Assembly (NCBI GenBank): GCA_965649765.1
Contig: OZ287759.1
Span: forward strand, 28,892,001-28,956,000
DNA length: 64,000 nucleotides
Origin: Bispira polyomma
Lineage: Eukaryota
Direction of reading: 5' to 3'
Shown: in pieces, positions 8,201 to 64,000 of the stretch
Position numbering within the stretch: the stretch's first letter is position 1
Layout of the letters: each line of letters starts with the position of its first letter
The notes under the pieces: model-generated
Database searches by the model: none
The model's input: only the letters and a program-made list of their open reading frames with translations
What the model was told of the DNA's origin: nothing
Made by a program: the position numbers and the translations under genes

Positions 8201-9615
8201 AGCCACAGTTATACTTATTCCTAAATCAGGCAACGACTCAAAAAACCCGTCCAATTATCGACCCATATTTTTGACAAGCTGTTTATGCAAAACCATGGAA
8301 AGAATGATTAATACAAGATTAGTTTGTTTCCTTGAAAAAAAAAGTATTTAAACAAAATATCAAAGTTGGTTTAGAAAAGGTCAAACCACAAAAAAAAAAA
8401 AAACAATTAATAAGACTTGAACATTTTATTTAAGATTCTTTTTAAAAAGGCAATAATGTAGTCTGTATTTTTTGATTTAGAAGAAGCCTATGATACGGTA
8501 TTGAAGCATAGTGTTGCTAGAGATTTACATAAAGCAGGCTTAAGGGGGGCAAATGCCCATGTTTATTAAGAATTTCGAATCCAACAGATTTTTTAGAGTT
8601 TGTTTAGGTTTTGTCTATTCTGATGTACATGAACAAGAGATAGGTGTCCCTCAAGGCAGCATCCTCTTTGTTATTTTATTTATTTTAAAGATTAATAGTA
8701 TTGCTGACGTAATTCTATCTAGTTTTAAAAAGTCTCTTTTTGTTGATGATTTTTCTATCAGTTGTTCTTCTGGAAATATTGCTCCAATAGAAAGGCAACT
8801 TCAATTGTGTCTCAATAGGGTTGAAAAAAGTTTTTTGGTGTTATCTTTGACAGTAAACCTAATTTTAAAGCACCCATTAATTATGTCCATAATAAATGTG
8901 TGAAAGCCATAAACTTGCTTAAAGGAGTTTCCAAAATGGATTGGGGGGCAGATAGAAGTGTTTTAATGAGACCCTATCGTTCATTTGTTTGTTCTAGAAT
9001 GGTATATGGTTTTGCTGTATTTAGTTCTGCTTGTACGTCTTATCTTAAAAGATTTGAACCCATTCAAAACCAGGGCTTAAGAATATGCCTAGGATCCTTC
9101 AGGGCTTCTCTAATGCAAAGCTTGTGGAAGCAAATGAACCACCCCGGTATTTAAGGTTTGATAATTTATGTGTTCAATATGCTTTGAAGTTGAGAAGAAA
9201 TCCTGACAATCCAGCTTACCCTGTTGTTTCTAATCCTCAGTTGTATAATTTTTATGATAAGAAGCCTTCTCCAATAAGATCATTGAGCATCGTATAGAGA
9301 AAGATTTGTCTGTTGTCTGTCCTCAGCTGGATCTAATTCGAACTGTGTAAGTGTCAGATGACCCACCCTAGATTATACAGAAACCTCACATAGACTTCAA
9401 TCTCACACATAAAAAGAAATATCTTCATAATGATTGTCTTTTTCAAAGACTATTTGCTGAGTTGACAAACTGTTATTTTGATCATAAGGCTATATATACT
9501 GATGGATCAAAGACAGAAAATAGGGTTGCTGCAGCTGCTACATCTGATGGCTTCAGTGTCCAGGTCAGACTTCCTGGTAATGCTAGTATATTCACAGCTG
9601 AATTACAGGCTCTTA
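5270..9615 (+). mobile_element. Decayed I-group (Nimb-like) LINE: gag-like ORF1 and APE-RT-RNase H ORF2
   Basis: ORF1 from ATG ~5368 (PRFLLI, KLSPFAVNK, zinc knuckle CYKCQKFGHTKFNC at ~5930). APE remnants LQETH, GDFNAH, SDHFP; RT motifs GPDEI, NYRPI, GVPQGS, LFVDDF; RNase H YTDGS...SIFTAELQA. Many stops and frameshifts. The 3' end abuts the satellite. Confidence 0.9.
6807..7080 (-). mobile_element. tRNA-derived SINE (family B) inserted in the LINE endonuclease region
   Basis: Minus strand has box A-like TGGTCTAGTGG and box B-like GGTTCTATTCC. 8-bp TSD ATGTAATG at 6799-6806 and 7081-7088; removing the insert restores ITVCNVYIPS. Confidence 0.85.
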
Positions 9616-9619
9616 TTAT

Positions 9620-10035
9620 CATTATCTTGTGTTGGTTTACAACATCATGGTCTTGTGCAGGTGTGCAATGTTATATCCTTGTGTTGGTTTACAACATTAT
9701 GGTATTGTGTAGGTGTGTAACATCATTGACGTCTGTTGGTTTACAACATCGTGGTCTTGTGAAGGTGTGCAACATCATAGTCGTGTGTTGGTTTACCACA
9801 TTATTTTCCTGTGTGGGTGTGCAACATTATGGTATTGTGTTGGTTGACAACATTATTGTCTTGTGTTGGTTTATATCATCAGAGTCTTGTGTATGTGTGT
9901 AACATAATGGTAGTGTGGGTGTGTAACATCATGATCTTGTGTAGGTATGCAACATTATGGTATTGTGTAGGTGTGTAACATCATGGTTGTGTGATGGTGT
10001 ACAAAATGATTGTCTTGTGTACTTGTGCAACAGCA
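9620..10035. repeat. More diverged block of the same 26-bp satellite
   Basis: Same GTGTTGGTTTACAACATCATGG monomers; the block ends ~50 bp before the first detected NPL acceptor. Confidence 0.9.
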
Positions 10036-10086
10036 TATTTTCATTTCCCCTAAAAGCTGCCAACTCTAATGTTATTTTTGTTACAG

Positions 10087-13000
10087 TTCCACATTGAAGG
10101 CCTGGTTCCTGCCGTTTTTACACCAATGACAACAAATGGGTTAGTGAACTTCTACCTGTGTACGTAAAACTAATAACTTCAACATTTAGTTCAGGAATTT
10201 TTGGCACAAAATAAACAAGATTAGCATTAAAGCAATTACAAATTAAACTCAAAAATCGAATTAAATTTATACTGTAACATGTCTTTGTTTGCTTCGCACT
10301 AGTAATGAATTTCCTGCTTAGAATTTTTACTGCTGACGATTGTAAAAAAAAACCTTGCAAAAAGTCCTTATTTTTGTAGATATTTATCTTACTAGACGGT
10401 TTTTAGTATCAAGAGCATGTTAATGTGTACATTTTTCTGTACATTTTGGCTTTGTTGCCTTGTTTCACAACCAAGAAACCCTATTTAGCAAGTGTTTATT
10501 TATTATGTTGCTACATTTGCCTTGTTTTGTCTTGAGAGGTGGTCGTATGGCAATTAAAAAAATATGTTACTGGATTTTATTTGACTCCTGTTGATGTAGT
10601 TTTATTTTTTCATACCTAGGGAACTCAATCTGGACTTAATCCCTACATACAGCAAGTTCCTCAAAGAACAGGGTATCAAGAGCATCTTTGGTAAATATAT
10701 GTCTTATTACTGCAGTTTATTTGTCATACCTTCATATTGTTGATTGAAATATAACCTATAACATGTTTAGGAGCTACAAACGATTACACGTCTCTTTACC
10801 TGAATATACATTCATTGTGTTTATTAAGAAAATATTTCAAAAGTTATACATTAACACAAACTCAGAGAGTAGCAAATATATATATTTTTCGGTCAACTTG
10901 AATTAGCGCAGTGGTCCTATTTTTTGTCCTAAAAAAGTTCAGCAATTTATATTTGAACGGACTATAGCAGGGGTGAGAGGTATAATTATAAAATTTATTT
11001 AATTGAATTAAAGAGGTATGAAACGTTAGCTGGTTTTGCAACTAAAATAACGGTCATAGATCTACATACACATAGAAACGTTACAATGTAATGTATCATG
11101 TAAGATTCAGTTGCATCAAATTAGTAATTTAGCCCGGTTCACATGACACAAATATTTTCATGCAAACCTTGATGGTTAGCTAGACAGACAAACAACAAAC
11201 CAGCAGACATGGGTAAAACATTACAGCTCCTTTGTTGAAGGTTAAATGTCATGTTAACATATAGCCACAGTATACATTACTTACACACAACTCAAACCTT
11301 TGTTACAGTAAATGGAACCACGGGAGAAGGACCCAGTTTGACCATAGAGGAACGGAAACAGGTGACAGAAGCTTGGCTGGCCAACCACAAACACGGGTAG
11401 TTACAAAACACAGAGATTTAGTTTGTTTGTACTATATTTGATACAAATAAAGTTATTTGTACTTTATTTTGCCTTTGTAATGTGATTTATTGAGTTTTAT
11501 ATGCAGTGATTTTAAATGAAAATGATTGCCAATATAGACCCATAATGTAGTCATTCAGTATTAAAAGCGGTTGGTTAATTCATAATGACCACAATTACTT
11601 ATCTAATAGATATAGATGGAACAGGCTTGAAAATATGATTTTCACAATATTAATAAAAAATACTTTCCTTTTAGTATAAGAAATACTTATGGATTTTAGT
11701 GTGGCCTACTGTAGAACTATATTTTAGTTCTATTGAGTATAATACTCGGTCTAAGTCTGTAGATTTGTTTCAGTGGTAATTGGTGATGGTAACTTGGTAA
11801 CATGGATTAGTTACCTAGTGTTTTGGTGAAACAATAGTGTGATTGCAATATGATATAATTTGCGTGGATCCAGCCAGATAAATTATAAATCCTGGCGTTA
11901 TCAGCTGGCCTTTTAAGTTTGTTAGACACATCTTATAATAGATAGAGGGTCTCACTGCTCAGATTGGTTGCTTCCTCTGGTAATTAAGTTTTACAGAAAA
12001 CATAATACACATCCACATATATACATTTATTTGCTAGTTGTTGTAGTCAGGATATGCCAGAAGCGAAACATATCCATTGTCAGTCTCCCATGGCCAAGTA
12101 GTTATGGCCTTGCTTTGGTGATGAGAAGGCAGGGAGTTTGAGAACATCTTTCTCAGAAAGTGTATGTATGTTGAGTTGGTTTCAAACTTTGTATCCCGGG
12201 GATCGTGGGCAAAACCGCGACAGTGGACAAACCATTTTGTTTAAAATGTGAGGATCGATAGGTTAAACTTAATCAGATGTTCTATAACATTTTAGGACTC
12301 TGAGTTATCATTTATAATTGAGTCATAGTGCTCTTTCTTTGCTTTGGTCATAAGTATATTAAAATAGTTTGTGGCAATTCTATATAGTGTATTTACTATT
12401 ATATAGGACGTACACCAACTGTAGTACTATTATTATTACCTTTCAGATTAGAACATGTTATCGTACATATTGGTGGTGCAAACCTAAAGGAGTCACAACA
12501 ATTGGTAACTATATTATTAATTTGATAAAAAAGTCAACAGGGGAGTACAGTTTTAAAGCATATAGTTTTGTTCATAATTATTCACTGTTGCTCATGGGAC
12601 AAGCGAGAAAGTATTAATTTTATCAGTGTTTTGGTCAACTTAATGTGAAACATTGGGAATTTCGGTTATTAACAATATAATAAAGTATTTCATATTTTAA
12701 ATTTGACTTGGGCAGGGATGAAATACATTTAAATTTATTAAATAAGAAAAATCACTATATTAAACTATAATGATTAAATCAATGGGATGGTGGCAATGCA
12801 CAAATTCATTGACCAGAACCCACTAGTTTTTCTTGGTTGGCTAATTGGGTTAATTTTGAGTCATTTTTGTAAAATAAATTTGTTTTTGCCATGCTGTAGA
12901 GGTCAAGGCTGATGCTATAGTGTTAATGCCTCATACAATTTTTATATTACCTGTTGTTTAAGGCTTGCCATGCTGCAGATGTCAAGGCTGATGCTATAGG

Positions 13001-16000
13001 GTTAATGCCTCCGACATTTATTAAGCCAGGAAGTGTTGGTAAGTTATTATACTAGTACTTATAAGTATACATAAGTATACTTATAACAGTACAGTACAGT
13101 ACAGTAAAAAAAACAATCTAGAAGATTATCGTGAAAACAATAACGTCTTCAAAGGTCTATTTTTTTGTGCTTCCTAGTTGTAAGCGTTAGACTACCCTTA
13201 CCTAATCGCACCTACATCTTTCCACATCTCAGAGCTGCTGAGGTATGGAGGTCTCTGGTGGTCGTGGGTTGCAGAGTGAAAGCAATTTCCAGGCGGAAAG
13301 AGAAGTTACAGTACATAATGCCACCACCTGGTACTGCCTACCATACCACCAATGTATGAAAAAGGCGTTAGTCTTCTAATAAATGATAATAACCTTGAGA
13401 GAGGAACCCTTAAATCTACAATGATATATTAAGCTGCTGTTGTTAACAATGTCATCGTTATTATCTTGTTAAAAAATAATATCATAATATAAAATTTTAC
13501 AGAAAGACACCTTAAAATCGATTAAGATCTATTAAGATCTTTTTAAGTGCGGTTTTGGTCAATATGTCATCATTGGATGAAGGATGTGTATTATGTTTTC
13601 TGTAAAAATTACTTACCGTATCCACTCCAAACATAATGTTATATTTACAGTGACCATAGTTATAACACAGGCTGGCTTCAGTCATGTCCCAAGTGGCTTC
13701 TCCATTTGTTTCATATAATATAACATATTGATTGAAATTATTATAAATATTTTGTTGAATCTTTTATTTTATATGAAAAAAAAGCCAATTAAAATGCCTA
13801 CCTTGCATTATTCTCAAAACTAAATAAGAACAAAAAAATTGGTACTACATCGCAACAAATTGGTAACAACACTAACCAGAACCCAATAGATTGCATACCT
13901 CCCCCGAAGGGCATAAAAACCCACCTAGATCTGCTTGAAAAATTTCAATTTAACATATCTTTTCTCATGACATAGTTTTTTTGTGTGACAAACAAGCCAA
14001 CCAATGGACACAGGCGAAAAGGTGACCTCCTAATTGGCGAAGGTAAATATTATATTATGTCTATCACCATTTTGGCATGTACTACTATTTTAGAGTCACT
14101 TGTGGAATATTGCTGTCAGGTGGCGAAGTGTGCCTCCAGTGTGCCCTTTTATTACTACAATCTACCGGTGATGACTGGAGTCAAGTGTAAGTATAGCCCA
14201 AGTGTTTTATCAAGGCATCATCTAATACCTGTGAGATTAATTTGTAATAATTATTTGAACTATTATAAATTTGCTGGATATTGTAAATAATTAAAAATGG
14301 TTTCTTCACAGTTCATTTGATTTGTGATATAACTGTATTGTAATTGTATTGGTGTTCCTCACAGTAAAGCAGATTTGTGGTGTGGCAAATTTAATTAAAT
14401 TGGTATTCACAGTTTATCAGACTTGTGGTATGACAAATGTAATTAAATTGGTGTTTACAGTTCATAAAATATGTGGTATGACAAATAAAACCTATTGATT
14501 AGATAAGATTAAGATGGTGCCGTGTGGTCTACATGCACACTGTGTTTTATGAACATAAATGACACAGATGAAATATATTGTATAGTGTACGAGACTGACA
14601 AATTCAGCCATGATTCACCATACCTAAACAAACACAACTGCTTACCTGTTGAAGAGCGTATTCTTTTTAAATACAACCTTCTTGTGTTCAAAGCAATCAA
14701 ACTTACTGTTTCCATTAGTTTGGTGCTGTATACATACTTGAATTATTAGTATGATAAATTAATTTCAAATTATCTGATAAATTTGAGGTTTTTAGTCTAT
14801 AGTATCAATCTGGATTGATTGTTAAATAAAATATCTTTACATAAAGCTAACATTTAACAAAATAATAATACTTTAATACTTTTTTTTAGTTAATATGTTG
14901 GATTATATGAAACTAATGGAGAAGTCAGTTCCCACATTCAGAGGCATCAAGTATTCAGATTATGACATGACTGAAGCCAGCCTGTGTTACAACTATGGTC
15001 ACTGTAAATATAACATTATGTTTGGAGTGGATCAGGTAAGTAATTTTTACAGCAAACATAATACACATCCTCATGTGTTCATTTATTTACTAGTTGTTGT
15101 GGCCAGGATATGCCTAAAACAAGACATATATGCAATAGCCAGTCTCCCATGTTCAAGTGGTTATGGACTTGGTCTGGTTATCGGAAGGTCATTGATTGAA
15201 CTCCTTGCAACACCATAATAACTAAACATGCCATTGCCAACTGATGACAACCGATGTTGTGATTTAAAAGTTAAGATACAGTGAAATTCGACAAGACAAT
15301 CCAATAGAGTATACTGTAGAAATCATATTTTAATGGGGCATAAAAAGAATGACGTAAACATAATCATTGTGGAAGGCTACTTTTATTTAAAGCATTATCT
15401 CTATAATATACTCGGATATTTAATTTATTTTGCATCAATTGGATTTATGGTTATTATCAAGTATCTGTAATATGTAAAAAATGTAGTTATTTTACCTAAT
15501 TTTCTTTAGCAACTACTGACGGCCCTTGTCTTTGGAATAGATGCTGCCATAGGGTCAACATACAACTTCATGTCTGCGATCTACCACCGTGTTATTGAAG
15601 CAAAGCAGAATGGTGAGTACAAAACAAACGAACAGTAACAAAGTCATTCTTAACTGCACAGCAAACTTATTAAACTTTTATAGCCTGTAATAACCATTGG
15701 GGTTTTAAAGATACATATAGTATTGTATTTGGCTTCATGTATACCTTTTGTATGCATTTCCCTCCGCCTGGAGAGCTATAGACTTTTTGTTTCCTCTATT
15801 AAACCCACCAAATAGGGTGGATCCAGAGCTTTCCACATAGAAGCCCCCATAGTATGGAACAGCCTCCCAGTTAAGCTCCTATCACTAAAAACCACTTATC
15901 GGATTAAGGAAAAAACTTAAACTTATCTTGTCAAGCTTGGTTATCCCCCTTAATTCTCTTTTGTAGACCCACGTCCTTCCTTACGATATGGCTATGCTTA

Positions 16001-55299: not shown

Positions 55300-55740
55300 C
55301 CATGAACTGTTTGAACTGTCAATATCATTGTACATACTGACCGGAAACGTCACCTGCCATAGGTAGTTTAATACGCACAGTACCAAAATACAATGAGCCA
55401 ATATGACACAGCAATACAGTGTAATCAAATACTGGCAGTGATAATATCTTATTTTTAAAAAAATTTGTTATTCAGCACAACAGTGTTATTTTAGCTGAAA
55501 CAATCCAATTCTGTTCAGTTCAACTCTACGGACCAAACAAATGCCTATATTGAAGCTGGTTTTGTCACTGTTGTATCGTCCCTATTACATAGAACAGAAA
55601 CTATAAACTGTTTGAATTGTAAATATTATTGTATATACTGAGCGGAAACGTCACCTTCGATAGGTGAATTTAATACGCCGAAGCAAATGCACAACACCAA
55701 AATACAATACAATTGTATCGTCCCTATTACATAGCACAGA
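55300..55740. repeat. Diverged direct duplication with ~300-bp offset
   Basis: AACTGTTTGAA-TGT-AATAT-ATTGTA-ATACTGA-CGGAAACGTCACCT at ~55305 and ~55607. Confidence 0.8.
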
Positions 55741-58497
55741 ACTGAATTTTATGTTAATAGAGTTCAACACATAATGGCACTTGTCTGTTAAAACAAAAAC
55801 ATTATACAAAATTTTGGAAAAAAACTTGCAGCATGGTCACCTGTTTTTACGTAAGCGTATTTAGGATATATTGAACAAAATTGTAGAGAAATAATCTAAA
55901 ATTTGCCCAGGCAAAAATTTAAAAAAAACTTTGTCAACTAAATTTTTGTTTTGTCAAGGGGAATTATTGTTTCATCCAGCCAAATTATTATTTCCACCAG
56001 GCAAATGTCCTAACATTGGCTAAATACTGATTTACCCTAAATACTATTTACCATATGAATAATATTTTATTGAAAGGACATATTTTTCAGTTGTTGCAGC
56101 TTTTTTTTAAATTACATTTTATTGGTAAACAAATGGCAGGGAAACTAATGTCAGATTTGTTGAATATTCAAAAGTCCAATTTGTACTTAATGTTACTTGT
56201 GAAAGGGTATCAACACCCTTATTGTGTTCACAATATGTTTTTTTTTACTAAAGGTTAACTTCTACATGTATTTATCTTATCTGTGTATCAAGGGTTCTCT
56301 AGGGCTATTTTAAGTACACATATGCAATATATTTAACCAAAGAATTACTGTGATTAAAGGATTTGATGTCAAGTAGATTCTGTAGCTGCCAAGGTTTAAG
56401 TGTTACATATTATACTTGTAAAAATTAAAACCACATACTGTACCAATTCAAAAATTCACCCTTGATATAAAAAGCTTTGCGAAGGACAGCCACTAGAAAA
56501 GCACCAGATGTCAATTTCCTGCTTTAATAAAGTTAACTCCCTTATAAATAGAACCTCAAGGAACATGAATAATAACCTAAACTTTAGCAGGATTTCCATT
56601 TAAGAGGGTATATTTTAAAATAAATGGCCACACTGGGACCACAGATTTACTTCAACATAAAAAGGAAATGAACTGATCAGAGTTCTATTTAAAGGGGTTT
56701 GACTGTATGTTGATATACTGCAAGACCAGAGGCCATATTCACAAAGATTCTTATTCTTAGAATTACTCGTATTCTTATAAATTTTCTAAATCTAAGAATT
56801 TTTTTTGAAACATTCTAAGAATAATATTTTTTACATTTGGTTTCTTAATCTTAATTTTTTTTTTAGAAGAATTACTACCTACAAAGATTCCAATTTTTGT
56901 TCCATTCTTAGATTTTACCTTCATTTAAATTTTTTTTCTTAAAAAAGTCAAAGAACAGAAATAAAATAAATTTGAAAATTGCTATTCTTTGAATTTTTGT
57001 TTAATCTGTGGCACTATAGAGTAAGGAATCTAAAATTGGCCACTGTATCTGAAATTGACCACCTGGAAAATGTTGTCTTTATTGTAGAATTGTGGGTAAC
57101 ATTTGCTGAAATCAAGATTTTTGTGACTATTTGGCCTTACTTAACCCGATTCCAGTTATATTTCGCCAGTTTTTATTGTTTTGGTTTAAATTTTAGGTGT
57201 GGTGAATTTCAGATACAGTGGCCAATTTTAGATTCCTTATTCTAACTGCTTGGTGGAGGTGTGTACTCTACTGAGTGCCCTTAATCTAGCCAAACATGAA
57301 AAATAAGTTAAGACAATGTCATTACATTTTGTGTTTGTGAACATTTTATATGTCAAGAGTGAAATTTTGATTGTTGCTTGTTATATTTTGGGAAAAACAA
57401 ATAAAACATAGAAATACAAGTATTTTGTTTTTGTATTCAAAACTGAGGTACTTTGTTATAATTTACACACTTAAAAGGAACTTTGTCTTTTACACATACA
57501 ATGATCTATGAAAAGTCAGGATTTGTTGTAATCTATAGACATTCTTGTGGTATAATTGGCATGTTCTAATTGATTTTACTTTGTTTTTGACAAACTGACA
57601 ATAATAATCTAGATAGATCAAATAAAAGAACAGCATTTCAACCATAAGAATAACCTATCAGCGGGACATGAAGGAAATAATTTTTTAATAGGTTACACAT
57701 AACTGGAGTCACCAATGCACCAACTACTTCCAGCATTCAATAAATTACTGCTTGTTGCTATTTACAAACCGAAAATAATAATCGAGATATATATCAAGTA
57801 AAGAAGAACATATTTATGTACTTAACCCCTTTTGTCCACAAGAGAAAACTGACATTAGGGAACGAAATGAAGATTTTTTTGGTAATAGGTTACAGATAGC
57901 TGAAGTAACTGAAACACACACCACAGACTACTTCCAGGAGTCAATAACTGCCTCCTGTATAATTTTGGCACCACAGCCACAATATGGTCTCTGAATTTCC
58001 TTATTACAAATGCTATGATTTTTTTAGCAGGTCTCTTTTTAGGGGTGTGGGCAAAACTTCTGACATATTACCGTTTCACCTGTGACCTTTACAAAGGCTA
58101 CATGATTAAAAATAAAATTTTATGTTACACCTGGTTCTCACAACTTTTCTCTGACAGTATTCTTTTTACCTCAACAAGAATTGGCATGTGCATTGTATAT
58201 GATAATATTGAATTCCGGATTGATGAGGCAAGAACTGAGCAAATGACGGGCCATTGATTGTGCAGTTTTGGTGAATCACCGGTCTTAAAAGTTGAAGTGT
58301 GTCCATCCTTCGTTGCCTTACCCCTCTACATTTTAACCCCTCTCTTCCACCTCTCCATATGCAACAAGTATGGATTGAGTATTTCATAAGTGTTTCCTGG
58401 GTGTACAAATGATCCGTTTTATCATTTCAAAGGTATTGTATATGTTTATAGAGATAAAGTGTTATGTGTGAGAGAGGATTTGTTTCTCCAACAAAAT

Positions 58498-58563
58498 GCC
58501 TTATATATATCTTTTATTGTTGATATATATTTCGATAATCTTATGGATAATCTCATCAGAGGC
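58498..58563 (-). ncRNA. Type I hammerhead ribozyme
   Basis: Minus strand: GCCT-CTGATGA-GATTATC cataa GATTATC-GAAA-TATATATC aacaataaaa GATATATA-TA-AGGC. Complete core; stem I 4 bp, stem II 6/7 bp, stem III 8 bp plus the core A-U pair. Confidence 0.88.
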
Positions 58564-59349
58564 TGATAAATGATTATAATTTTTCCTTGAAGTACTATAA
58601 TTGACTCCGGTTGCCTCCGGCGGATCCAAGGCTTCCTCCGTTTGAGCCATGGGATCCTCCTTTGAGGTAATGTATTTAGAGGAGTCAGACCATTTTTTTT
58701 TGACCATTTGGGATTAATAAGTAGAGTATTATGGTGTATATTCTATCAAAAATAAGCCCATGGGAATTGGTCTAATGAACATAATGAAGCAAAGGTGACA
58801 ATGCGTTCAGGTTGTATATATGTTCACTGGTGGGGAGATTTATGGTTTCCCTGGTATGAATATTTATGGGGATTTCATACCGATAAATAGTATTAGGATT
58901 AAAAATTGTTGTGTTAATCAATGGGTGACATTGGTTTATGATCACCAAGAGGCCATGTTAGGTCTCAGAAGATTACTTAGTGGGGTTTTTTATATATATA
59001 AGGAAGTAATAGATGTGAAATCGAATTTTTAATAAGATTCCAGCATCGATTACTGTTTCATTTTCTGAAATTGGTATTTTCTAAATATCACAAGGAGGAT
59101 TACTATTTGTGTAATGCCAGGTGTTGATTATAAATTCTTATGATTTTATTACATCATTCAATATATATAATCATCTTGTATATAAGTGTACTAGACAAAT
59201 ATAAATATATATATGAATAAATACCCATAAATAACCTTAACTTTAATATTTTATGAATATTTTGCTAACTTATTAAATATTGTCCATTTAATATAAACAG
59301 TTTTTATCCGTTGAGTGATAAACTTAATTAATATAGTTCCATATTAAGT

Positions 59350-60189
59350 TCATAGTGGTGGGGTTATGTCCCCACACACAGTTTCTAGATATTCCATGAG
59401 CTCAAAGCTGCATTTGGGTTGTGCTATATTGCCCCATCTCTGTGGTGAGGGAGTGGCTAAGCGCATGGGGAGCGGGTCCTCAGGTGAGTGAGTCCTCTCC
59501 TGTAGTGCTACAGCTAAGGGCAGGCCATTGGTTAATCGCTTGGTCTGGTACTTACTGGTATAGTATTCAGGGATACTGACCCCAGGTGTGGTGGGTGGGT
59601 CACTAGTTATGGGTGACCATGGGGAGACTGCAGCTACCTCATCCAAGTGCTTCTGATGGGGAGAAGTAGATGATTCAGTCATCTTTTGTGATGATTGTTG
59701 ACCCTTGTCTTTATAAAACTTTGGGGTGGTGTTGGTGCCTCTATGCGTCACCTTAACCGGATTGGGTAGTGTGCAGATGTCAGTTTGGGTAGTAATGCTC
59801 ACTATTGTCTTGGTGAACAGGGTTTCACTGGTAGCATTGGCAGTGAGAAGAGAGTTGGCTGAGTTATCCAAGAAATCAGGCAAGTCACTAGTACCGGAAA
59901 GTGCCGGAGAGTCCGAAACAAACTGGTCCAAGAAATTCTCTGCGGTTGTGGGAGAATTGTTGGGATGTGTTTGTTCTTCACTATCCACACAGTCCAAAAT
60001 ATTTTGAAAATCATTATGGGCTGGGTGTTTCACAGAGATATGTCTCTTGAGATAGTCTGGTCTTCTAAAACCCAATTTACAAAACCGACAATAGATTCTA
60101 AATTCCTGATGTGAACTTCTAATGTGTCTTCTAAGATTACATTTCTTAGAATAATTTTTGTGACAGATTGCACAAGTAAACCACATCAT
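59350..60189 (-). CDS. Uninterrupted 279-aa ORF: two N-terminal C2H2 zinc fingers and an S/T/P-rich tail; apparent Penelope-like element cargo
   Basis: FTCAICHKNYSKKCNLRRHIRSSH and IYCRFCKLGFRRPDYLKRHISVKH; open frame of 840 nt in AT-rich DNA. Confidence 0.85.
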   Translation of the reverse strand: MMWFTCAICHKNYSKKCNLRRHIRSSHQEFRIYCRFCKLGFRRPDYLKRHISVKHPAHNDFQNILDCVDSEEQTHPNNSPTTAENFLDQFVSDSPALSGTSDLPDFLDNSANSLLTANATSETLFTKTIVSITTQTDICTLPNPVKVTHRGTNTTPKFYKDKGQQSSQKMTESSTSPHQKHLDEVAAVSPWSPITSDPPTTPGVSIPEYYTSKYQTKRLTNGLPLAVALQERTHSPEDPLPMRLATPSPQRWGNIAQPKCSFELMEYLETVCGDITPPL

Positions 60190-60513
60190 AAAACTGTAGT
60201 ATATTTATAATAATATAGATAACCAATTGTTGAGTGGTTACTACTATACACATAAACTAAGATATGTTTAAAATCAGCCAATTTGTTTATGTTGGAGATG
60301 GTGACCAGGTAACTTAGGTGAGTTAAGTGGTGATAATTACATCATAATAGACTGATCGTAGTGTGACGTCATAACGTTGCCTTACGTCAGTGGTGACATT
60401 GTGATGTCACATTCCCTCATTGTGGGTGTTTTGCCCATGTATGAGTTGCCCAATATAGGTAAATATAAAAATAGGTACACCTGGGTTATGGGTGTGATAA
60501 GAGGGCATACAAC

Positions 60514-62927
60514 TCATACAAACATATTGATGCCTGCTGGGTGTATGGTTGGGAAGGCCCAGATTAAATATAATTCCTGGCGTTTACGCCTTTCAGTGGA
60601 ATCTGGTGTGTTATCCATTCCCATCCACTGGAAAATGCTGAACTCCATGTGTTTCACAGAATGATTGTTCTGTGTGAAGTGCCTGGAGACAGGAGTGGAT
60701 TTGTTTGTCTGGAAGTTTTGAACACTTCTGCAGTGTTCATACATTCTTTGTCTGAATGGTCTTTTTGTTTCTCCAATATATTGGAGGCCACATTTTGCAC
60801 AATTTATAATGTAAATTACATTATTTAGTCCACAAGTAATTTTGTGTTTAAGTGGGAGGTTTAAACATTTGAAGACTTTCTTGGTGTTGTAACTGGTGAT
60901 GTTTTCCAGTTTTTTAATCCTAGGACAATAGGTACATTTGCCCAATCTTGTGCAGACTGGGATATGTGTTTGGGTTTTGGTTGTGTCCTGTTTTGGTGGG
61001 AATAGGACTTTAGCTGAGGTGAGCTTGTCCTTTAAATTGGGTAGTTTCCTATATCCAATTAGTGTTTTGACTTGAAGATTTTACTTAGTTCTTCAGTATT
61101 TTGGATTATATTCCAATTGCCATTAATTAGTGGATTAATGTGGGGGTTGAAGGGGTTAAACTGTGTGACCATGACTGGTGTGTCAATGGGTTTTTGTGTG
61201 TGCACTTTATTGAGTAGCTCACTTTGTGAGAATTTGTTTGCCCTTTTGTAATGTTTTTTGAGGGAACTAAATGGGTATCCTCTTTTTAAGTAGTACCCTG
61301 TTAGTTTGTGAGCGTTTTCTTGGAAGTCACTGTCTAACGTACAAATTCTCCTGAGGCGTAAATATTGCCCATAAGGACTTTTATCCAGGACACTTCTTGG
61401 GTGAGCTGAATTAAATGCAAGATACATGTGGGTATCTGTGGGTTTATTGTAGAGAGTTGTGATCAGTTCTCTAGCGGGACTAAACTTGACAGTTGTGTCA
61501 AGAAAGTTAATTTTGTAATGGCTGTATTCATATGTGAATTTAATTGTATCATGTAATGAATTCAGGTACTCAATAAATTTTATGAGTTGTTGTTCCCCAT
61601 GTGTCCAGATCATAAATATGTCATCTATGAATCTCTTCCACACTAAGGGTTTTAGTGAGTAACCATTTAGTGCTTTTGTTTCAAATCTGTCCATGAAAAT
61701 ATTTGCATAGTTAGGTGCAAGGGCTGTGCCCATGGCTGTACCTCCTATTTGGAGGAAGTGATCACCATTAAATTCAAAGTTCATACTGTGTAATACCAAT
61801 TTGAGGAGGTCCAGTATGAAGTTTGCTATTGGTGTTTTAGTGGGGTCACCTCTCAGTTTTTCTCCCACTGCCAATAATCCCTCTTGATTGGGGATATTGG
61901 TATATAAGGATGAGACGTCTAAAGTACATAGGATTGCTCCTTCTGGGATGGCACCTAAGTCTTTAATCTTTTTAATAAAGTCTTGAGTGTCTCTGATATA
62001 GGATTTTGTGGCTGGTACATATTTTTTGATATGTTCATCGACCAGTTTACTAATTCTGCTAGTGGGGTGATTTACAGAACTACATATGGGTCTACCTGGG
62101 ACTCCTTTTTTATGTATTTTGGGGAGTAGGTAGAACCTGCTTTCTGTGCAGTTTTTAGGGCTCAAATGTTCTAGGTTTTTTTCTGATATGAGGCCTTTGT
62201 GTCTCATTTTAATCAGAGTGTTAGTTACTTTCTCACTGACTTCATTTGTGAGGTCATGGTCAAGTTGGGTATAGAAGTTACTATCTCCTAATTGTCTATA
62301 ACCTTCTCTGAGGTAATCAGTTGTGTTCATTACTACAACTGCAGAGCCTTTGTCCGCTTTTTTAATAACTATATCTGGGTTATTACTTAATTCTCTTAGT
62401 TCTACAAATTGGCCTTTGGTCAAGTTTGGATTCTTTCTGGCCTTAGTTTTACTTTTAAGTAATCCTAATTTGAAAGCTCTATGGAAAATCTCCAGTGACT
62501 GGTGTGTCCTTGGTGGTTTCCAATTGCTTTTATCAACAAATTGGTTATGAATATCCTTATATGGGTTTTCACATTCATCTAGGTTAGAGGCCAAGAATTC
62601 AACTAGCTCGTTTTCACTTTGGTCCAAGTGATTTAGGAGGTTGTTGTCTTGAAAGAAGTGGTACTTAAGACAAAGTCTTCTATGGAAGTCTTTGAAGTCT
62701 AACCAAATCTGTGATTTGTTAGGTGGACCAGGTGTGGGGCAAAAAGTTAGGCCTTTTTGTAGTGCAGAGACCTGGTCATCACTCAGGGTCACATCTGACA
62801 GATTAATGACAGTGTGTCCAATGAGGTTGTCCATGGTTCTGCCCTTATGGAGAATACCTGGAGGAGCTGTTTTGGACTCCTCCTTTATATTCCTAAGAAT
62901 GTCTTTATAATTTATCCTTTCCATCAT
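60514..62927 (-). mobile_element. Penelope-like element ORF (RT + Cys linker + GIY-YIG endonuclease, Neptune-like), broken by a single 1-bp deletion at ~61064
   Basis: VINLS, KGLTFCP, KKADKGSAVV, FYLLPKIHK, GRPICS, DVSSLYTNIP, GTAMG, WKRFIDDIF, FLD, KPTD, HP; linker CTRLGKCTYC; EN NVIYIINCAKCGLQYIGET...RMYEH...HF...GIN. Restoring one base, present in the second copy, gives one 804-aa ORF. Confidence 0.95.
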
Positions 62928-62974
62928 AAACAATGTGAAATAGGATTAAGTACTGAAGTCAAGAAAGGGCTCCC

Positions 62975-64000
62975 CTGGTCGATGAACATATCAAAAAATA
63001 TGTACCAGCCACAAAATCGTATATCAGAGACACTCAAGACTTTATTAAAAAGATTAAAGACTTAGGTGCCATCCCAGAAGGAGCAATCCTATGTACTTTA
63101 GACGTCTCATCCTTATATACCAATATCCCCAATCAAGAGGGATTATTGGCAGTGGGAGAAAAACTGAGAGGTGACCCCACTAAAACACCAATAGCAAACT
63201 TCATACTGGACCTCCTCAAATTGGTATTACACAGTATGAACTTTGAATTTAATGGTGATCACTTCCTCCAAATAGGGGGTACAGCCATGGGCACAGCCCT
63301 TGCACCTAACTATGCAAATATTTTCATGGACAGATTTGAAACAAAAGCACTAAATGGTTACTCACTAAAACCCTTAGTGTGGAAGAGATTCATAGATGAC
63401 ATATTTATGATCTGGACACATGGGGAACAACAACTCATAAAATTTATTGAGTACCTGAATTCATTACATGATACAATTAAATTCACATATGAATACAGCC
63501 ATTACAAAATTAACTTTCTTGACACAACTGTCAAGTTTAGTCCTGCTAGAGAACTGATCACAACTCTCTACAATAAACCCACAGATACCCACATGTATCT
63601 TGCATTTAATTCAGCTCACCCAAGAAGTGTCCTGGATAAAAGTCCTTATGGGCAATATTTACGCCTCAGGAGAATTTGTACGTTAGACAGTGACTTCCAA
63701 GAAAACGCTCACAAACTAACAGGGTACTACTTAAAAAGAGGATACCCATTTAGTTCCCTCAAAAAACATTACAAAAGGGCAAACAAATTCTCACAAAGTG
63801 AGCTACTCAATACAGTGCACACACAAAAACCCATTGACACACCAGTCATGGTCACACAGTTTAACCCCTTCAACCCCCACATTAATCCACTAATTAATGG
63901 CAATTGGAATATAATCCAAAATACTGAAGAACTAAGTAAAATCTTCAAGTCAAAACCACTAATTGGATATAGGAAACTACCCAATTTAAAGGACAAGCTC
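62975..64000 (+). mobile_element. Inverted, 5'-truncated second copy of the Penelope-like element, running out of the window
   Basis: Reverse complement of 61021-62045; by eye only 2 substitutions and 1 indel; frame open to the window edge. Confidence 0.95.

What the first reader, a model, noticed from the sequence alone, without database searches (positions are those of the whole stretch)
58498..62927. Two-gene Penelope-like retroelement: RT-GIY-YIG plus a C2H2 zinc-finger ORF enclosed by the hammerhead
Seen on the minus strand, 5' to 3': RT-EN ORF, 324-bp spacer, intact 279-aa C2H2 ORF, ~790-bp AT-rich region, hammerhead ribozyme. Established: endonuclease-bearing Penelope-like elements normally have a single ORF, with hammerheads in the terminal repeat just 3' of it; multi-ORF forms are known mainly from endonuclease-less Athena/Terminon elements. 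Inference: since the hammerhead lies beyond the zinc-finger ORF, that ORF is part of the mobile unit. It may be an element-encoded transcription regulator, targeting factor or anti-silencing protein, defining a possibly undescribed PLE subtype. I cannot verify novelty without a search.
Basis: partly seen in the sequence, partly recalled or inferred. Interest (0 to 1): 0.88.

Follow-up and report, generated by a model that had tools for sequence, protein, structure and literature searches.

The report
Penelope-like retroelement with zinc-finger gene
This is one damaged copy of a common jumping gene of the Penelope-like class whose family keeps a separate, selectively maintained gene for a two-zinc-finger protein between its enzyme gene and its self-cutting RNA motif, although such elements are described as single-gene.

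Summary
On the minus strand lie an RT part, a GIY-YIG part, a 324-bp spacer, an intact 279-codon C2H2 ORF, about 784 bp of AT-rich DNA and a hammerhead. In this copy RT and EN are in different frames. The copy is also 5'-truncated. Full-length units are about 5.44 kb and have three ORFs: a 267-aa ORF1, an 806-aa RT-EN and the zinc-finger ORF3.

ORF3 belongs to the element. All 30 fetched copies share the 3' end at window 58447, with variable 5' truncation. The order RT-EN, ORF3, hammerhead recurs in three diverged lineages of this genome and in a second assembly. dN/dS between lineages is 0.18-0.26. Rfam misses the hammerhead, but compensatory changes in helices II and III support it.

New here: the insertion has two inverted arms inside one 10-11-bp target-site duplication. 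One arm ends at 58447. The other ends 51 nt after the EN stop and lacks ORF3. Genome counts fit one end of each kind per insertion.

ORF3's function is inferred, not shown. No RNA data were available. This scan already reported the same family on other DNA of this genome (s1-585864, s1-585849, s1-581971). I found no published Penelope-like element with a C2H2 3' ORF. Verdict: new variant of a known kind.

The parts
58437..58446 (.). Left copy of the target-site duplication, TGTATATGTT(T). The right copy lies beyond the window, at the outer end of the inverted arm (L033:2557-2567, window-equivalent about 64557-64567).
   Evidence: The same 10-11 nt directly abut the outer ends of the two arms.
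58447..62969 (-). Direct (long) arm of the insertion, 4,523 bp. It is 5'-truncated and lacks the 917-nt ORF1 segment. It holds RT-EN (frameshifted), the spacer, ORF3, the AT-rich region, the hammerhead and the 3' tail.
   Evidence: In one search the loose end at 62969 equals the end of the ORF1 segment.
58447..58501 (-). 3' tail after the hammerhead cleavage site, with an AC-rich stretch. The insertion end 'site A' is at 58447, 54 nt after the cut.
   Evidence: All 30 copies end at 58447-58450. Many different flanks meet this point in DNA contigs. Equivalent ends occur in other lineages.
58498..58565 (-). Type I hammerhead ribozyme motif. Helix I is GCCU/AGGC. The CUGAUGA and GAAA cores are present. 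Helix II has 7 bp and helix III 9 bp. The predicted cut lies between 58502 and 58501.
   Evidence: Of the paired cells 90.6% form pairs, against 24-46% in slid controls. Seven pairs show compensatory change.
58566..59349 (-). AT-rich non-coding region between ORF3 and the hammerhead. It is poorly conserved between lineages.
59350..60189 (-). ORF3, 279 aa. It has two N-terminal C2H2 fingers (aa 4-27 and 32-55) and a long disordered tail with conserved short motifs. It is intact in this copy.
60336..60410 (-). Cluster of CRE-like TGACGTCA-type motifs in the EN-ORF3 spacer. It is conserved across lineages and in the second assembly, and is the putative internal promoter.
   Evidence: alignment A4 has invariant blocks.
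60462..60513 (-). Sequence just after the EN stop, with a conserved 5-6-bp stem-loop (60495-60477). The second insertion end 'site B' is at 60462-60464, where all inverted arms stop.
60514..61058 (-). EN part of ORF2: the CX5CxxC linker and the GIY-YIG domain with two Cys between GIY and YIG. In this copy its frame differs from that of the RT.
61059..62933 (-). RT part of ORF2 (624 codons, DKG motif, RVT_1). It ends at a premature stop caused by the one-base length difference at 61063/61064.
62975..64000 (+). Inverted (short) arm. It is 100% identical to 62045..61064 of the direct arm and starts at RT residue about 295. It runs out of the window and ends at site B without ORF3 (L033:975-2557).

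Best explanation
The stretch is the long arm of one recent insertion of an endonuclease-bearing Penelope-like element (PLE).

Anatomy of the family (shown). The EN has the CX5CxxC linker and the internal Cys pair of the Neptune/Nematis type. Full-length units are about 5.44 kb. They read ORF1 (267 aa, basic), ORF2 (RT-GIY-YIG, 806 aa), a conserved spacer, ORF3 (279 aa), an AT-rich region, a type I hammerhead and a 54-nt tail. ORF3 has two C2H2 fingers and a disordered tail.

This copy (shown). It lacks ORF1 and has a frameshift in ORF2, but it keeps the spacer, ORF3 and the hammerhead intact.

ORF3 (shown). It is a genuine element gene. It co-diverges with the EN and is under purifying selection, although it evolves about five times faster than the EN at the protein level.

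Integration (inferred). As for the PLE studied in vitro (PMC11167929), reverse transcription starts at internal RNA sites and both target DNA strands prime synthesis. Here there are two fixed start sites 2 kb apart. Site B lies 51 nt after the EN stop, beside a conserved stem-loop. Site A lies 54 nt after the hammerhead cut. Each integration uses one site per DNA end. This gives two inverted, variably 5'-truncated arms inside one target-site duplication, and only the site-A arm carries ORF3.

Expression and role (inferred). The CRE-rich spacer acts as the promoter in the pseudo-LTR, so ORF3 is the first cistron of transcripts that start there. ORF3 can therefore be made even by dead copies such as this one. 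Its protein is a trans-acting nucleic-acid-binding accessory factor. My best guess is a regulator of the element's own promoter or RNA.
For: Domains and ORFs.

Copy number, shared 3' end and variable 5' ends.

The same gene order holds in lineages A, B and C and in assembly ERZ22147071.

Selection on ORF3:
- omega is 0.19-0.26 for window against L044/L045.
- omega is 0.18 for L037 against L046.
- Within a lineage omega is about 1.

ORF3 and EN trees are congruent.

Hammerhead: the core is invariant, with 3 compensatory pairs in helix II and 4 in helix III.

Two-arm structure:
- Inverted arms end at 60462-60464 in every locus examined.
- A 10-11-bp target-site duplication brackets both arms.
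- Genome counts within one mismatch are 238 for the motif 5' of site B, 66 for the motif 3' of it, and 172 for the site-A motif. That gives 172 site-B-terminated ends against 172 site-A motifs.

The site-B stem-loop keeps pairing through changed bases in three lineages.

Spacer CRE blocks are invariant across lineages and in the second assembly.

AlphaFold gives two confident fingers and a disordered remainder.

Finger residues at helix positions +3 and +6 of finger 1, and -1, +3 and +6 of finger 2, are invariant in alignment A3.

Literature for internal initiation, extension of both strands and an AC-rich stem-loop: PMC11167929.
Against: - No RNA run holds the stretch. Transcription, the start site in the spacer, translation of ORF3 and ribozyme cleavage are therefore all unshown.
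- Rfam does not recognise the hammerhead at its threshold.
- The minimum-free-energy fold of the isolated 101 nt is not the hammerhead fold.
- The one-to-one use of sites A and B rests on about 11 inspected loci and on motif counts. Those counts include tandem arrays.
- ORF3's synonymous sites are 2-4 times more diverged than the EN's in the same element pairs. Simple co-evolution does not explain this.
- The function of ORF3 is argued from domain content alone.
Confidence: 0.7

Rival explanations
1. The promoter-ORF3-hammerhead block (site B to site A, about 2 kb) is a separate non-autonomous element that rides on the PLE machinery. It would resemble a retrozyme or SINE and would merely be found joined to RT-EN copies.
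For: - The block is bounded by two alternative cDNA start sites, and most EN 3' ends (about 172 of 238) stop before it.
- Its synonymous divergence exceeds that of RT-EN.
- Animal retrozymes are proposed to be PLE derivatives (bioRxiv 10.64898/2026.07.22.740005).
Against: - The 5' ends of ORF3-bearing copies are scattered from 60207 to beyond 61689. They do not pile up at site B.
- Identity between lineages does not break at site B. It falls only near 60290-60240.
- ORF3 and EN trees are congruent.
- Every lineage with ORF3 has it 305-385 nt (about 320 nt in most) after an EN.
Confidence: 0.1
2. ORF3 is the element's RNA-binding or chaperone protein, a functional analogue of LINE ORF1p. It would help assemble or fold the ribonucleoprotein and would not act on DNA.
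For: - The L1Tc retrotransposon ends in a two-C2H2 protein with nucleic-acid chaperone activity (PMC2805920, abstract listed).
- The finger helices are very basic.
- A disordered tail is common in chaperones.
Against: - Full-length units already have a basic ORF1 in the usual position.
- ORF3's tail is acidic, serine/threonine/proline-rich, and holds conserved acidic-hydrophobic motifs. I read these as activation or adaptor segments; no tool tested this.
Confidence: 0.2
3. ORF3 is a passenger gene captured from the host. It has no role for the element, or it is a chance ORF that is never translated.
For: - No expression data exist.
- Its GC content (46-50%) differs from the rest of the element.
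Against: - The ORF is open at 258-348 codons in lineages only 40-57% identical, and in a second assembly.
- omega is 0.18-0.26.
- Zinc ligands and base-contacting residues are invariant.
- No stand-alone host homologue turned up beyond generic zinc-finger proteins.
Confidence: 0.04
4. The head-to-head pair of arms, 100% identical over 982 nt, is an assembly artefact and not a real insertion structure.
For: Perfect inverted repeats can arise from misassembly.
Against: - The same arm geometry, with different truncation points, occurs at more than 10 loci and in the second assembly.
- A target-site duplication brackets the pair.
- The arms differ by one base in length at 61063/61064.
Confidence: 0.02

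Closest known systems
Canonical EN+ Penelope-like elements of the Neptune/Nematis type (Arkhipova 2006; Craig et al. 2021, PMC8557442)
   Same: - An RT with the DKG motif followed by a C-terminal GIY-YIG EN.
- A CX2-5CxxC linker and two Cys between GIY and YIG.
- A hammerhead in the 3' region or pseudo-LTR.
- Tandem and inverted complex insertions, variable 5' truncation and AT-rich targets.
   Different: - Three ORFs instead of one.
- A conserved C2H2 gene lies between the EN and the hammerhead, so the pseudo-LTR is 2 kb long and coding.
- The hammerhead has a long helix III (6-9 bp), unlike the minimal dimeric form usual in metazoan PLEs (PMC4209133).
- Clade placement by RT phylogeny against reference sets was not done.
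Poseidon PAc from Anolis (Frangieh et al. 2024, PMC11167929)
   Same: - Reverse transcription starts at internal RNA sites beside an AC-rich stem-loop.
- Both DNA strands are cut and extended.
- Copies end a short way past the hammerhead (the 'tail').
   Different: - In PAc the two start sites are adjacent, 30-40 nt apart, and lie inside the ORF start.
- Here the two ends are 2 kb apart, flank a gene, and appear to be used one per DNA end.
- The evidence here comes from genomic copies, not from biochemistry.
Athena/Terminon EN-less PLEs with many ORFs (PMC5408684, PMC6431247)
   Same: A PLE RT accompanied by additional co-oriented ORFs.
   Different: - Those elements lack the EN or carry a distinct one, sit at telomeres and reach 40 kb.
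- Their extra ORFs are esterases, exonucleases and coiled-coil proteins.
- This element is EN+, 5.4 kb long, dispersed on all large contigs, and its extra ORF is a C2H2 protein.
Neptune with an unassigned ORF1 in killifish (PMC12602865); Chlamys-2 with an upstream zf-CCHC ORF (PMC8557442)
   Same: They show that EN+ PLEs can have a second ORF.
   Different: Those ORFs lie upstream of the RT and are not C2H2 proteins. None is reported downstream of the EN.
C2-L1Tc, the two-C2H2 C-terminal protein of Trypanosoma L1Tc (PMC2805920), and the N-terminal C2H2 fingers of R2
   Same: A retroelement-encoded pair of C2H2 fingers, in L1Tc at the 3' end of the element.
   Different: They belong to a different retroelement class and are part of a polyprotein, not a separate ORF. 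No sequence relationship was tested or seen.

Membership tests
Penelope-like elements, EN+ (C-terminal GIY-YIG) | Reverse transcriptase domain with PLE motifs such as DKG | tested here: met
   RVT_1 matches at E 1.4e-7 to 9e-8. The string ADKGSAVVV is read directly in the ORF. PLE-specific RT phylogeny was not run.
Penelope-like elements, EN+ (C-terminal GIY-YIG) | GIY-YIG endonuclease C-terminal to the RT in the same ORF | tested here: met
   PF01541 matches at E 4e-7. There is a single 806-aa ORF in L044 and many 810-codon open frames in the genome. In the window copy the two parts are in different frames.
Penelope-like elements, EN+ (C-terminal GIY-YIG) | CCHH motif with two Cys between GIY and YIG; CX2-5CxxC linker (Neptune/Nematis/Naiad) | tested here: met
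   Read directly: C-x5-C-x2-C lies upstream of the EN, and C-x2-C lies between the IY and YIG motifs. The criteria are from PMC8557442.
Penelope-like elements, EN+ (C-terminal GIY-YIG) | Hammerhead motif in the 3' region or pseudo-LTR | tested here: met
   The motif is conserved with covariation in nine sequences of five lineages. It falls below Rfam thresholds.
Penelope-like elements, EN+ (C-terminal GIY-YIG) | Partial-tandem and inverted insertions, 5' truncation, target-site duplication | tested here: met
   There are tandem arrays of period about 5,435 bp, an upstream partial tail (L044), inverted arms and a 10-11-bp target-site duplication.
Penelope-like elements, EN+ (C-terminal GIY-YIG) | Single ORF (as canonical EN+ PLEs are described) | tested here: not met
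   Full-length units have three conserved ORFs. This is a descriptive norm and not a defining character, and exceptions are published.
Athena/Terminon (EN-less, telomeric PLEs) | No EN domain; telomeric location with telomere-repeat tails | tested here: not met
   The EN is present and copies are dispersed inside chromosome-scale contigs.
Hydra clade of PLEs | No CCHH; CxCX5C linker; DKT instead of DKG | tested here: not met
   DKG, the CX5CxxC linker and the internal Cys pair are all present.
Hammerhead ribozyme, type I | Conserved core (CUGAUGA, GAAA, cleavage triplet NUH) framed by three helices, with helix I open | tested here: met
   The core is invariant in all nine sequences. The cleavage triplet is AUA. 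Helices II and III covary, while helix I (4 bp) never varies.
Hammerhead ribozyme, type I | Self-cleavage activity | not testable with these tools
   No raw RNA reads were available. An in vitro transcription assay is needed.
C2H2 zinc-finger proteins | C-x2-C-x12-H-x4-H units that fold as beta-beta-alpha | tested here: met
   zf-C2H2 matches at E 5e-8 with two stretches. The AlphaFold model gives pLDDT 77-93 for residues 1-60, with two strand-strand-helix units.

The most novel reading that the evidence does not exclude
This is an undescribed PLE lineage, seen in at least two genomes, that has turned its pseudo-LTR into a gene cassette. A CRE-driven promoter and a fast-evolving two-finger transcription-factor-like gene sit between two alternative reverse-transcription start sites. 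A dimeric RNP uses the two sites together, one per cut DNA end. Each integration would then leave one arm with the cassette and one without. The many dead copies would keep supplying the factor in trans, to switch the family on or to shield it from silencing.
Probability: 0.3. Interest if true: 0.8.

Novelty: new variant of a known kind. Interest (0 to 1): 0.62.

Why it matters
Penelope-like elements are the least understood class of eukaryotic retrotransposons. They are described as coding for one protein.

This family carries a conserved, separately promoted DNA- or RNA-binding gene. It also leaves a clean genomic record of two fixed cDNA start sites used within a single integration. That offers natural material for three questions:
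- how these elements are transcribed;
- why they insert as inverted or tandem arms;
- what the hammerhead does.

It also matters for annotation. Intact ORF3 copies will be called as host zinc-finger genes, and the short arms will be scored as separate elements.

Tried and rejected
- Rfam at gathering score over the whole window, and at E<=10 over 7 kb, found no hammerhead. Only a sub-threshold RAGATH-1 match appeared on 201 nt.
- Folding the isolated 101 nt gave a different minimum-energy structure.
- An RNA run search listed no run on record as RNA. The three holders are contigs, and they confirmed DNA-level features but say nothing on expression or cleavage.
- The profile search of 1.84 billion representatives was swamped by poly-zinc-finger proteins. 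All true full-length relatives that I traced came from the one assembly ERZ22147071.
- The ESM Atlas look-alike search returned only generic zinc-finger clusters.
- Module-swap hypothesis: I took the excess synonymous divergence of ORF3 as a sign of exchange of 3' modules. ORF3 and EN trees are congruent, so it is not supported.
- A hammerhead-like inverted match on the plus strand at 57778-57807 has no core motif near it, so I dismissed it as an AT-rich chance match.
- I did not use a zinc-finger recognition code to predict a target site, because two fingers give too degenerate a motif.
- I could not identify the host species or the species behind ERZ22147071.
- I did not place the RT among reference PLE clades, because no reference set was at hand.


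Full report
**1. What is in the window**

On the minus strand, the ORF listing and Pfam give the following:
- a 624-codon ORF with RVT_1 (62933..61059);
- a 143-codon ORF with GIY-YIG (60945..60514);
- a 279-codon ORF with two N-terminal C2H2 fingers (60189..59350).

The spacer between the EN stop and the ORF3 start is exactly 324 bp. The non-coding stretch from the ORF3 stop to the hammerhead is 784 bp at 25-38% GC.

The RT and EN parts are in different frames. An inverted repeat of 982 nt at 100% identity (61064-62045 against 62975-63956) continues with a shift of one base. Other copies carry one continuous ORF of 806 codons. Public DNA contigs show the one-base length difference at 61063/61064. 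This copy therefore has a frameshifted ORF2.

**2. The hammerhead**

Rfam finds nothing at gathering score, nor at E<=10 on 7 kb. On 201 nt it gives an 18.3-bit match to RAGATH-1-hammerhead, whose alignment equals my manual reading. That reading is:
- helix I GCCU/AGGC;
- the CUGAUGA core;
- a 7-bp helix II;
- CGAAA;
- a 9-bp helix III;
- the cleavage triplet AUA, with the cut between 58502 and 58501.

The same motif stands at the same relative place in every lineage of the family and in a second assembly. On an alignment of nine sequences, 90.6% of cells are paired, against 24-46% when partners are slid. Seven pairs show changes on both sides, three in helix II and four in helix III. No shuffle of 500 reached the observed covariation score. 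Helix I never varies, so it is uninformative.

The long helix III differs from the minimal, dimer-dependent hammerheads described for metazoan PLEs. It resembles the monomeric variants of fungal and protist PLEs (PMC4209133).

**3. ORF3 belongs to the element**

The ORF3 DNA has at least 40 full-length copies at 94-100% identity on many contigs. At protein level there are 1,025 candidates, falling into lineages at about 99, 91-94, 65, 52-57 and 43-45% identity. Most have open frames of 258-284 codons.

Thirty fetched copies all lose homology to the window at 58447-58450. Their 5' ends are scattered from 60207 to beyond 61689. This is the signature of target-primed reverse transcription of one RNA that contains both EN and ORF3.

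In every lineage ORF3 follows the EN on the same strand. The gap is about 320 nt in most, with a range of 305-385. Identities to the window are:

| Lineage | RT/EN | ORF3 |
|---|---|---|
| B | 84-87% | 55% |
| C | 67-74% | 40% |

The only public protein relatives found (20 by profile search, all without names) come from the ENA assembly ERZ22147071. There RT (71-78%), EN (69-74%) and ORF3 (30-40%) stand in the same order, again with inverted arms.

**4. Selection on ORF3**

- Between sub-lineages at unsaturated distances, omega for ORF3 is 0.19-0.26 (window against L044/L045; dS 0.14-0.15).
- For L037 against L046 it is 0.18 (dS 0.76).
- This is the same range as the EN (0.12-0.20).
- Between copies of one lineage omega is about 1, as expected for decay after insertion.

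ML trees of ORF3 and EN for eleven elements are congruent.

ORF3 evolves about five times faster than the EN at non-synonymous sites. Unexpectedly, it is also 2-4 times more diverged at four-fold sites inside identical residues (Fisher p 0.003 to 8e-5). The effect is seen again in the second assembly. I could not explain this, and it is recorded as unexplained.

**5. Full-length structure**

Tandem arrays (C2, period about 5,435 bp) and a copy with an upstream partial tail (L044) show that a 917-nt segment precedes window position 62969. It carries a 267-aa basic ORF1 with no Pfam family. ORF1 is conserved at 42-46% identity in lineage C.

The family thus has three ORFs. The window copy is 5'-truncated 36 nt upstream of the listed ORF2 start (62933). 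The loose end seen at 62969 in DNA contigs is the end of the ORF1 segment.

**6. Two fixed ends and one integration**

In all loci with an inverted arm, that arm ends at the equivalent of 60462-60464. This is 51 nt after the EN stop, and the arm has no ORF3. Just upstream lies a stem-loop that keeps pairing through different bases in three lineages: ACACC/GGUGU, GGCAC/GUGCC and UGCACC/GGUGCA.

The window's inverted arm starts at 62975, leaves the window and ends at L033:2557. The same 10-11 nt, TGTATATGTT(T), abut the outer ends of both arms. The two arms therefore arose in one event.

Genome-wide counts within one mismatch are:
- 238 for the motif just 5' of site B;
- 66 for the motif just 3' of site B;
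- 172 for the site-A motif.

That gives 172 arms ending at site B against 172 site-A motifs. This fits one end of each kind per insertion, with the caveat that tandem arrays add internal site-A motifs.

The picture matches the biochemistry of an Anolis PLE, which shows internal initiation beside an AC-rich stem-loop and extension of both DNA strands (PMC11167929). The difference is that here the two start sites are 2 kb apart and bracket a gene. My proposal is that a dimeric RNP sits on both sites of one RNA and primes one cDNA from each cut end. This is inference.

**7. The spacer and ORF3 expression**

The EN-ORF3 spacer is more conserved between lineages (77-80%) than ORF3 itself (41-76%). 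It holds invariant TGACGTCA-type blocks in all lineages and in the second assembly. PLE promoters are placed in the pseudo-LTR (PMC11167929; PMC8557442). I therefore infer that this cluster is the promoter and that ORF3 is the first cistron of transcripts starting there. No RNA data were available to test this.

**8. The ORF3 protein**

AlphaFold models two confident fingers (residues 1-60, pLDDT 77-93). Residues 61-189 are disordered, and there are short helices at 212-220 and 264-273.

Across lineages the following are invariant:
- the zinc ligands;
- helix positions +3 and +6 of finger 1;
- helix positions -1, +3 and +6 of finger 2.

This suggests a conserved nucleic-acid target. The tail keeps a string of short motifs, several of them acidic-hydrophobic.

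My preferred reading is a trans-acting regulator of the element's own promoter or RNA. A chaperone role, target tethering and anti-silencing are not excluded.

**9. Comparison with what is known**

By the criteria of Craig et al. 2021, the element is a canonical C-terminal EN+ PLE of the Neptune/Nematis type. It has DKG, the CX5CxxC linker and the internal Cys pair. It is not Hydra, Naiad or Athena.

Extra ORFs are published for Athena/Terminons, for a killifish Neptune (ORF1), for Neptune-like esterases and for Chlamys-2 (upstream zf-CCHC). Three full-text searches found no PLE with a C2H2 ORF downstream of the EN.

The same family was already reported by this scan on other DNA of this genome (s1-585864, s1-585849, s1-581971). 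I reached the three-ORF structure and the two-end structure before reading those notes, and I tested them here.

**10. Verdict**

This is a real feature and a new variant of a known kind. The structural claims are well supported. The expression and function of ORF3, ribozyme activity and the two-site priming model remain to be tested.

Noticed in passing
window 59350-60189 against 60514-62933; loci L037, L042, L048, L049, L031, L053: Four-fold sites inside identical residues are 2-4 times more diverged in ORF3 than in EN/RT of the same element pairs (for example 39/62 against 35/91, p=0.003). ORF3 and EN trees are nevertheless congruent. ORF3 is also GC-richer (46-50% against 35-40%).
   Followed up: partly
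G000:C2:59172000-59199000 (L034-L036): A tandem array of at least four complete three-ORF units with a period of about 5,435 bp. An inverted short arm lies at its left edge.
   Followed up: partly
window 57017-57244: An inverted repeat with 55-nt arms (89% complementary) 118 nt apart. It looks like a foldback or MITE and gives a far sub-threshold Rfam match to a plant miRNA family.
   Followed up: no
window 55302-55741: Direct repeats of 63 nt (87%, spacing 301) and 29 nt (97%, spacing 142). They may be a short tandem or satellite-like block.
   Followed up: no
L053:100-3250 and 9300-14700 (assembly ERZ22147071): The PLE insertion sits in a long array of repeated small ORFs (55, 114 and 145 aa; period about 1.7 kb). 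This is probably a satellite or tandem gene array of the second species.
   Followed up: no
window 58517-58526 (hammerhead loop III): An AATAAA lies in loop III of the hammerhead in this lineage only. Lineages B and C and the second assembly lack it.
   Followed up: yes
G000:C1:3851083-3854693 and C1:38168141-38171645 (motif positions only): A site-B end is followed about 3.42 kb later by a same-strand site-A motif, and then by an opposite-strand site-A motif 65-170 nt further on. This suggests short arms copied from multimeric RNA and paired with very short site-A arms. The sequence could not be fetched.
   Followed up: no
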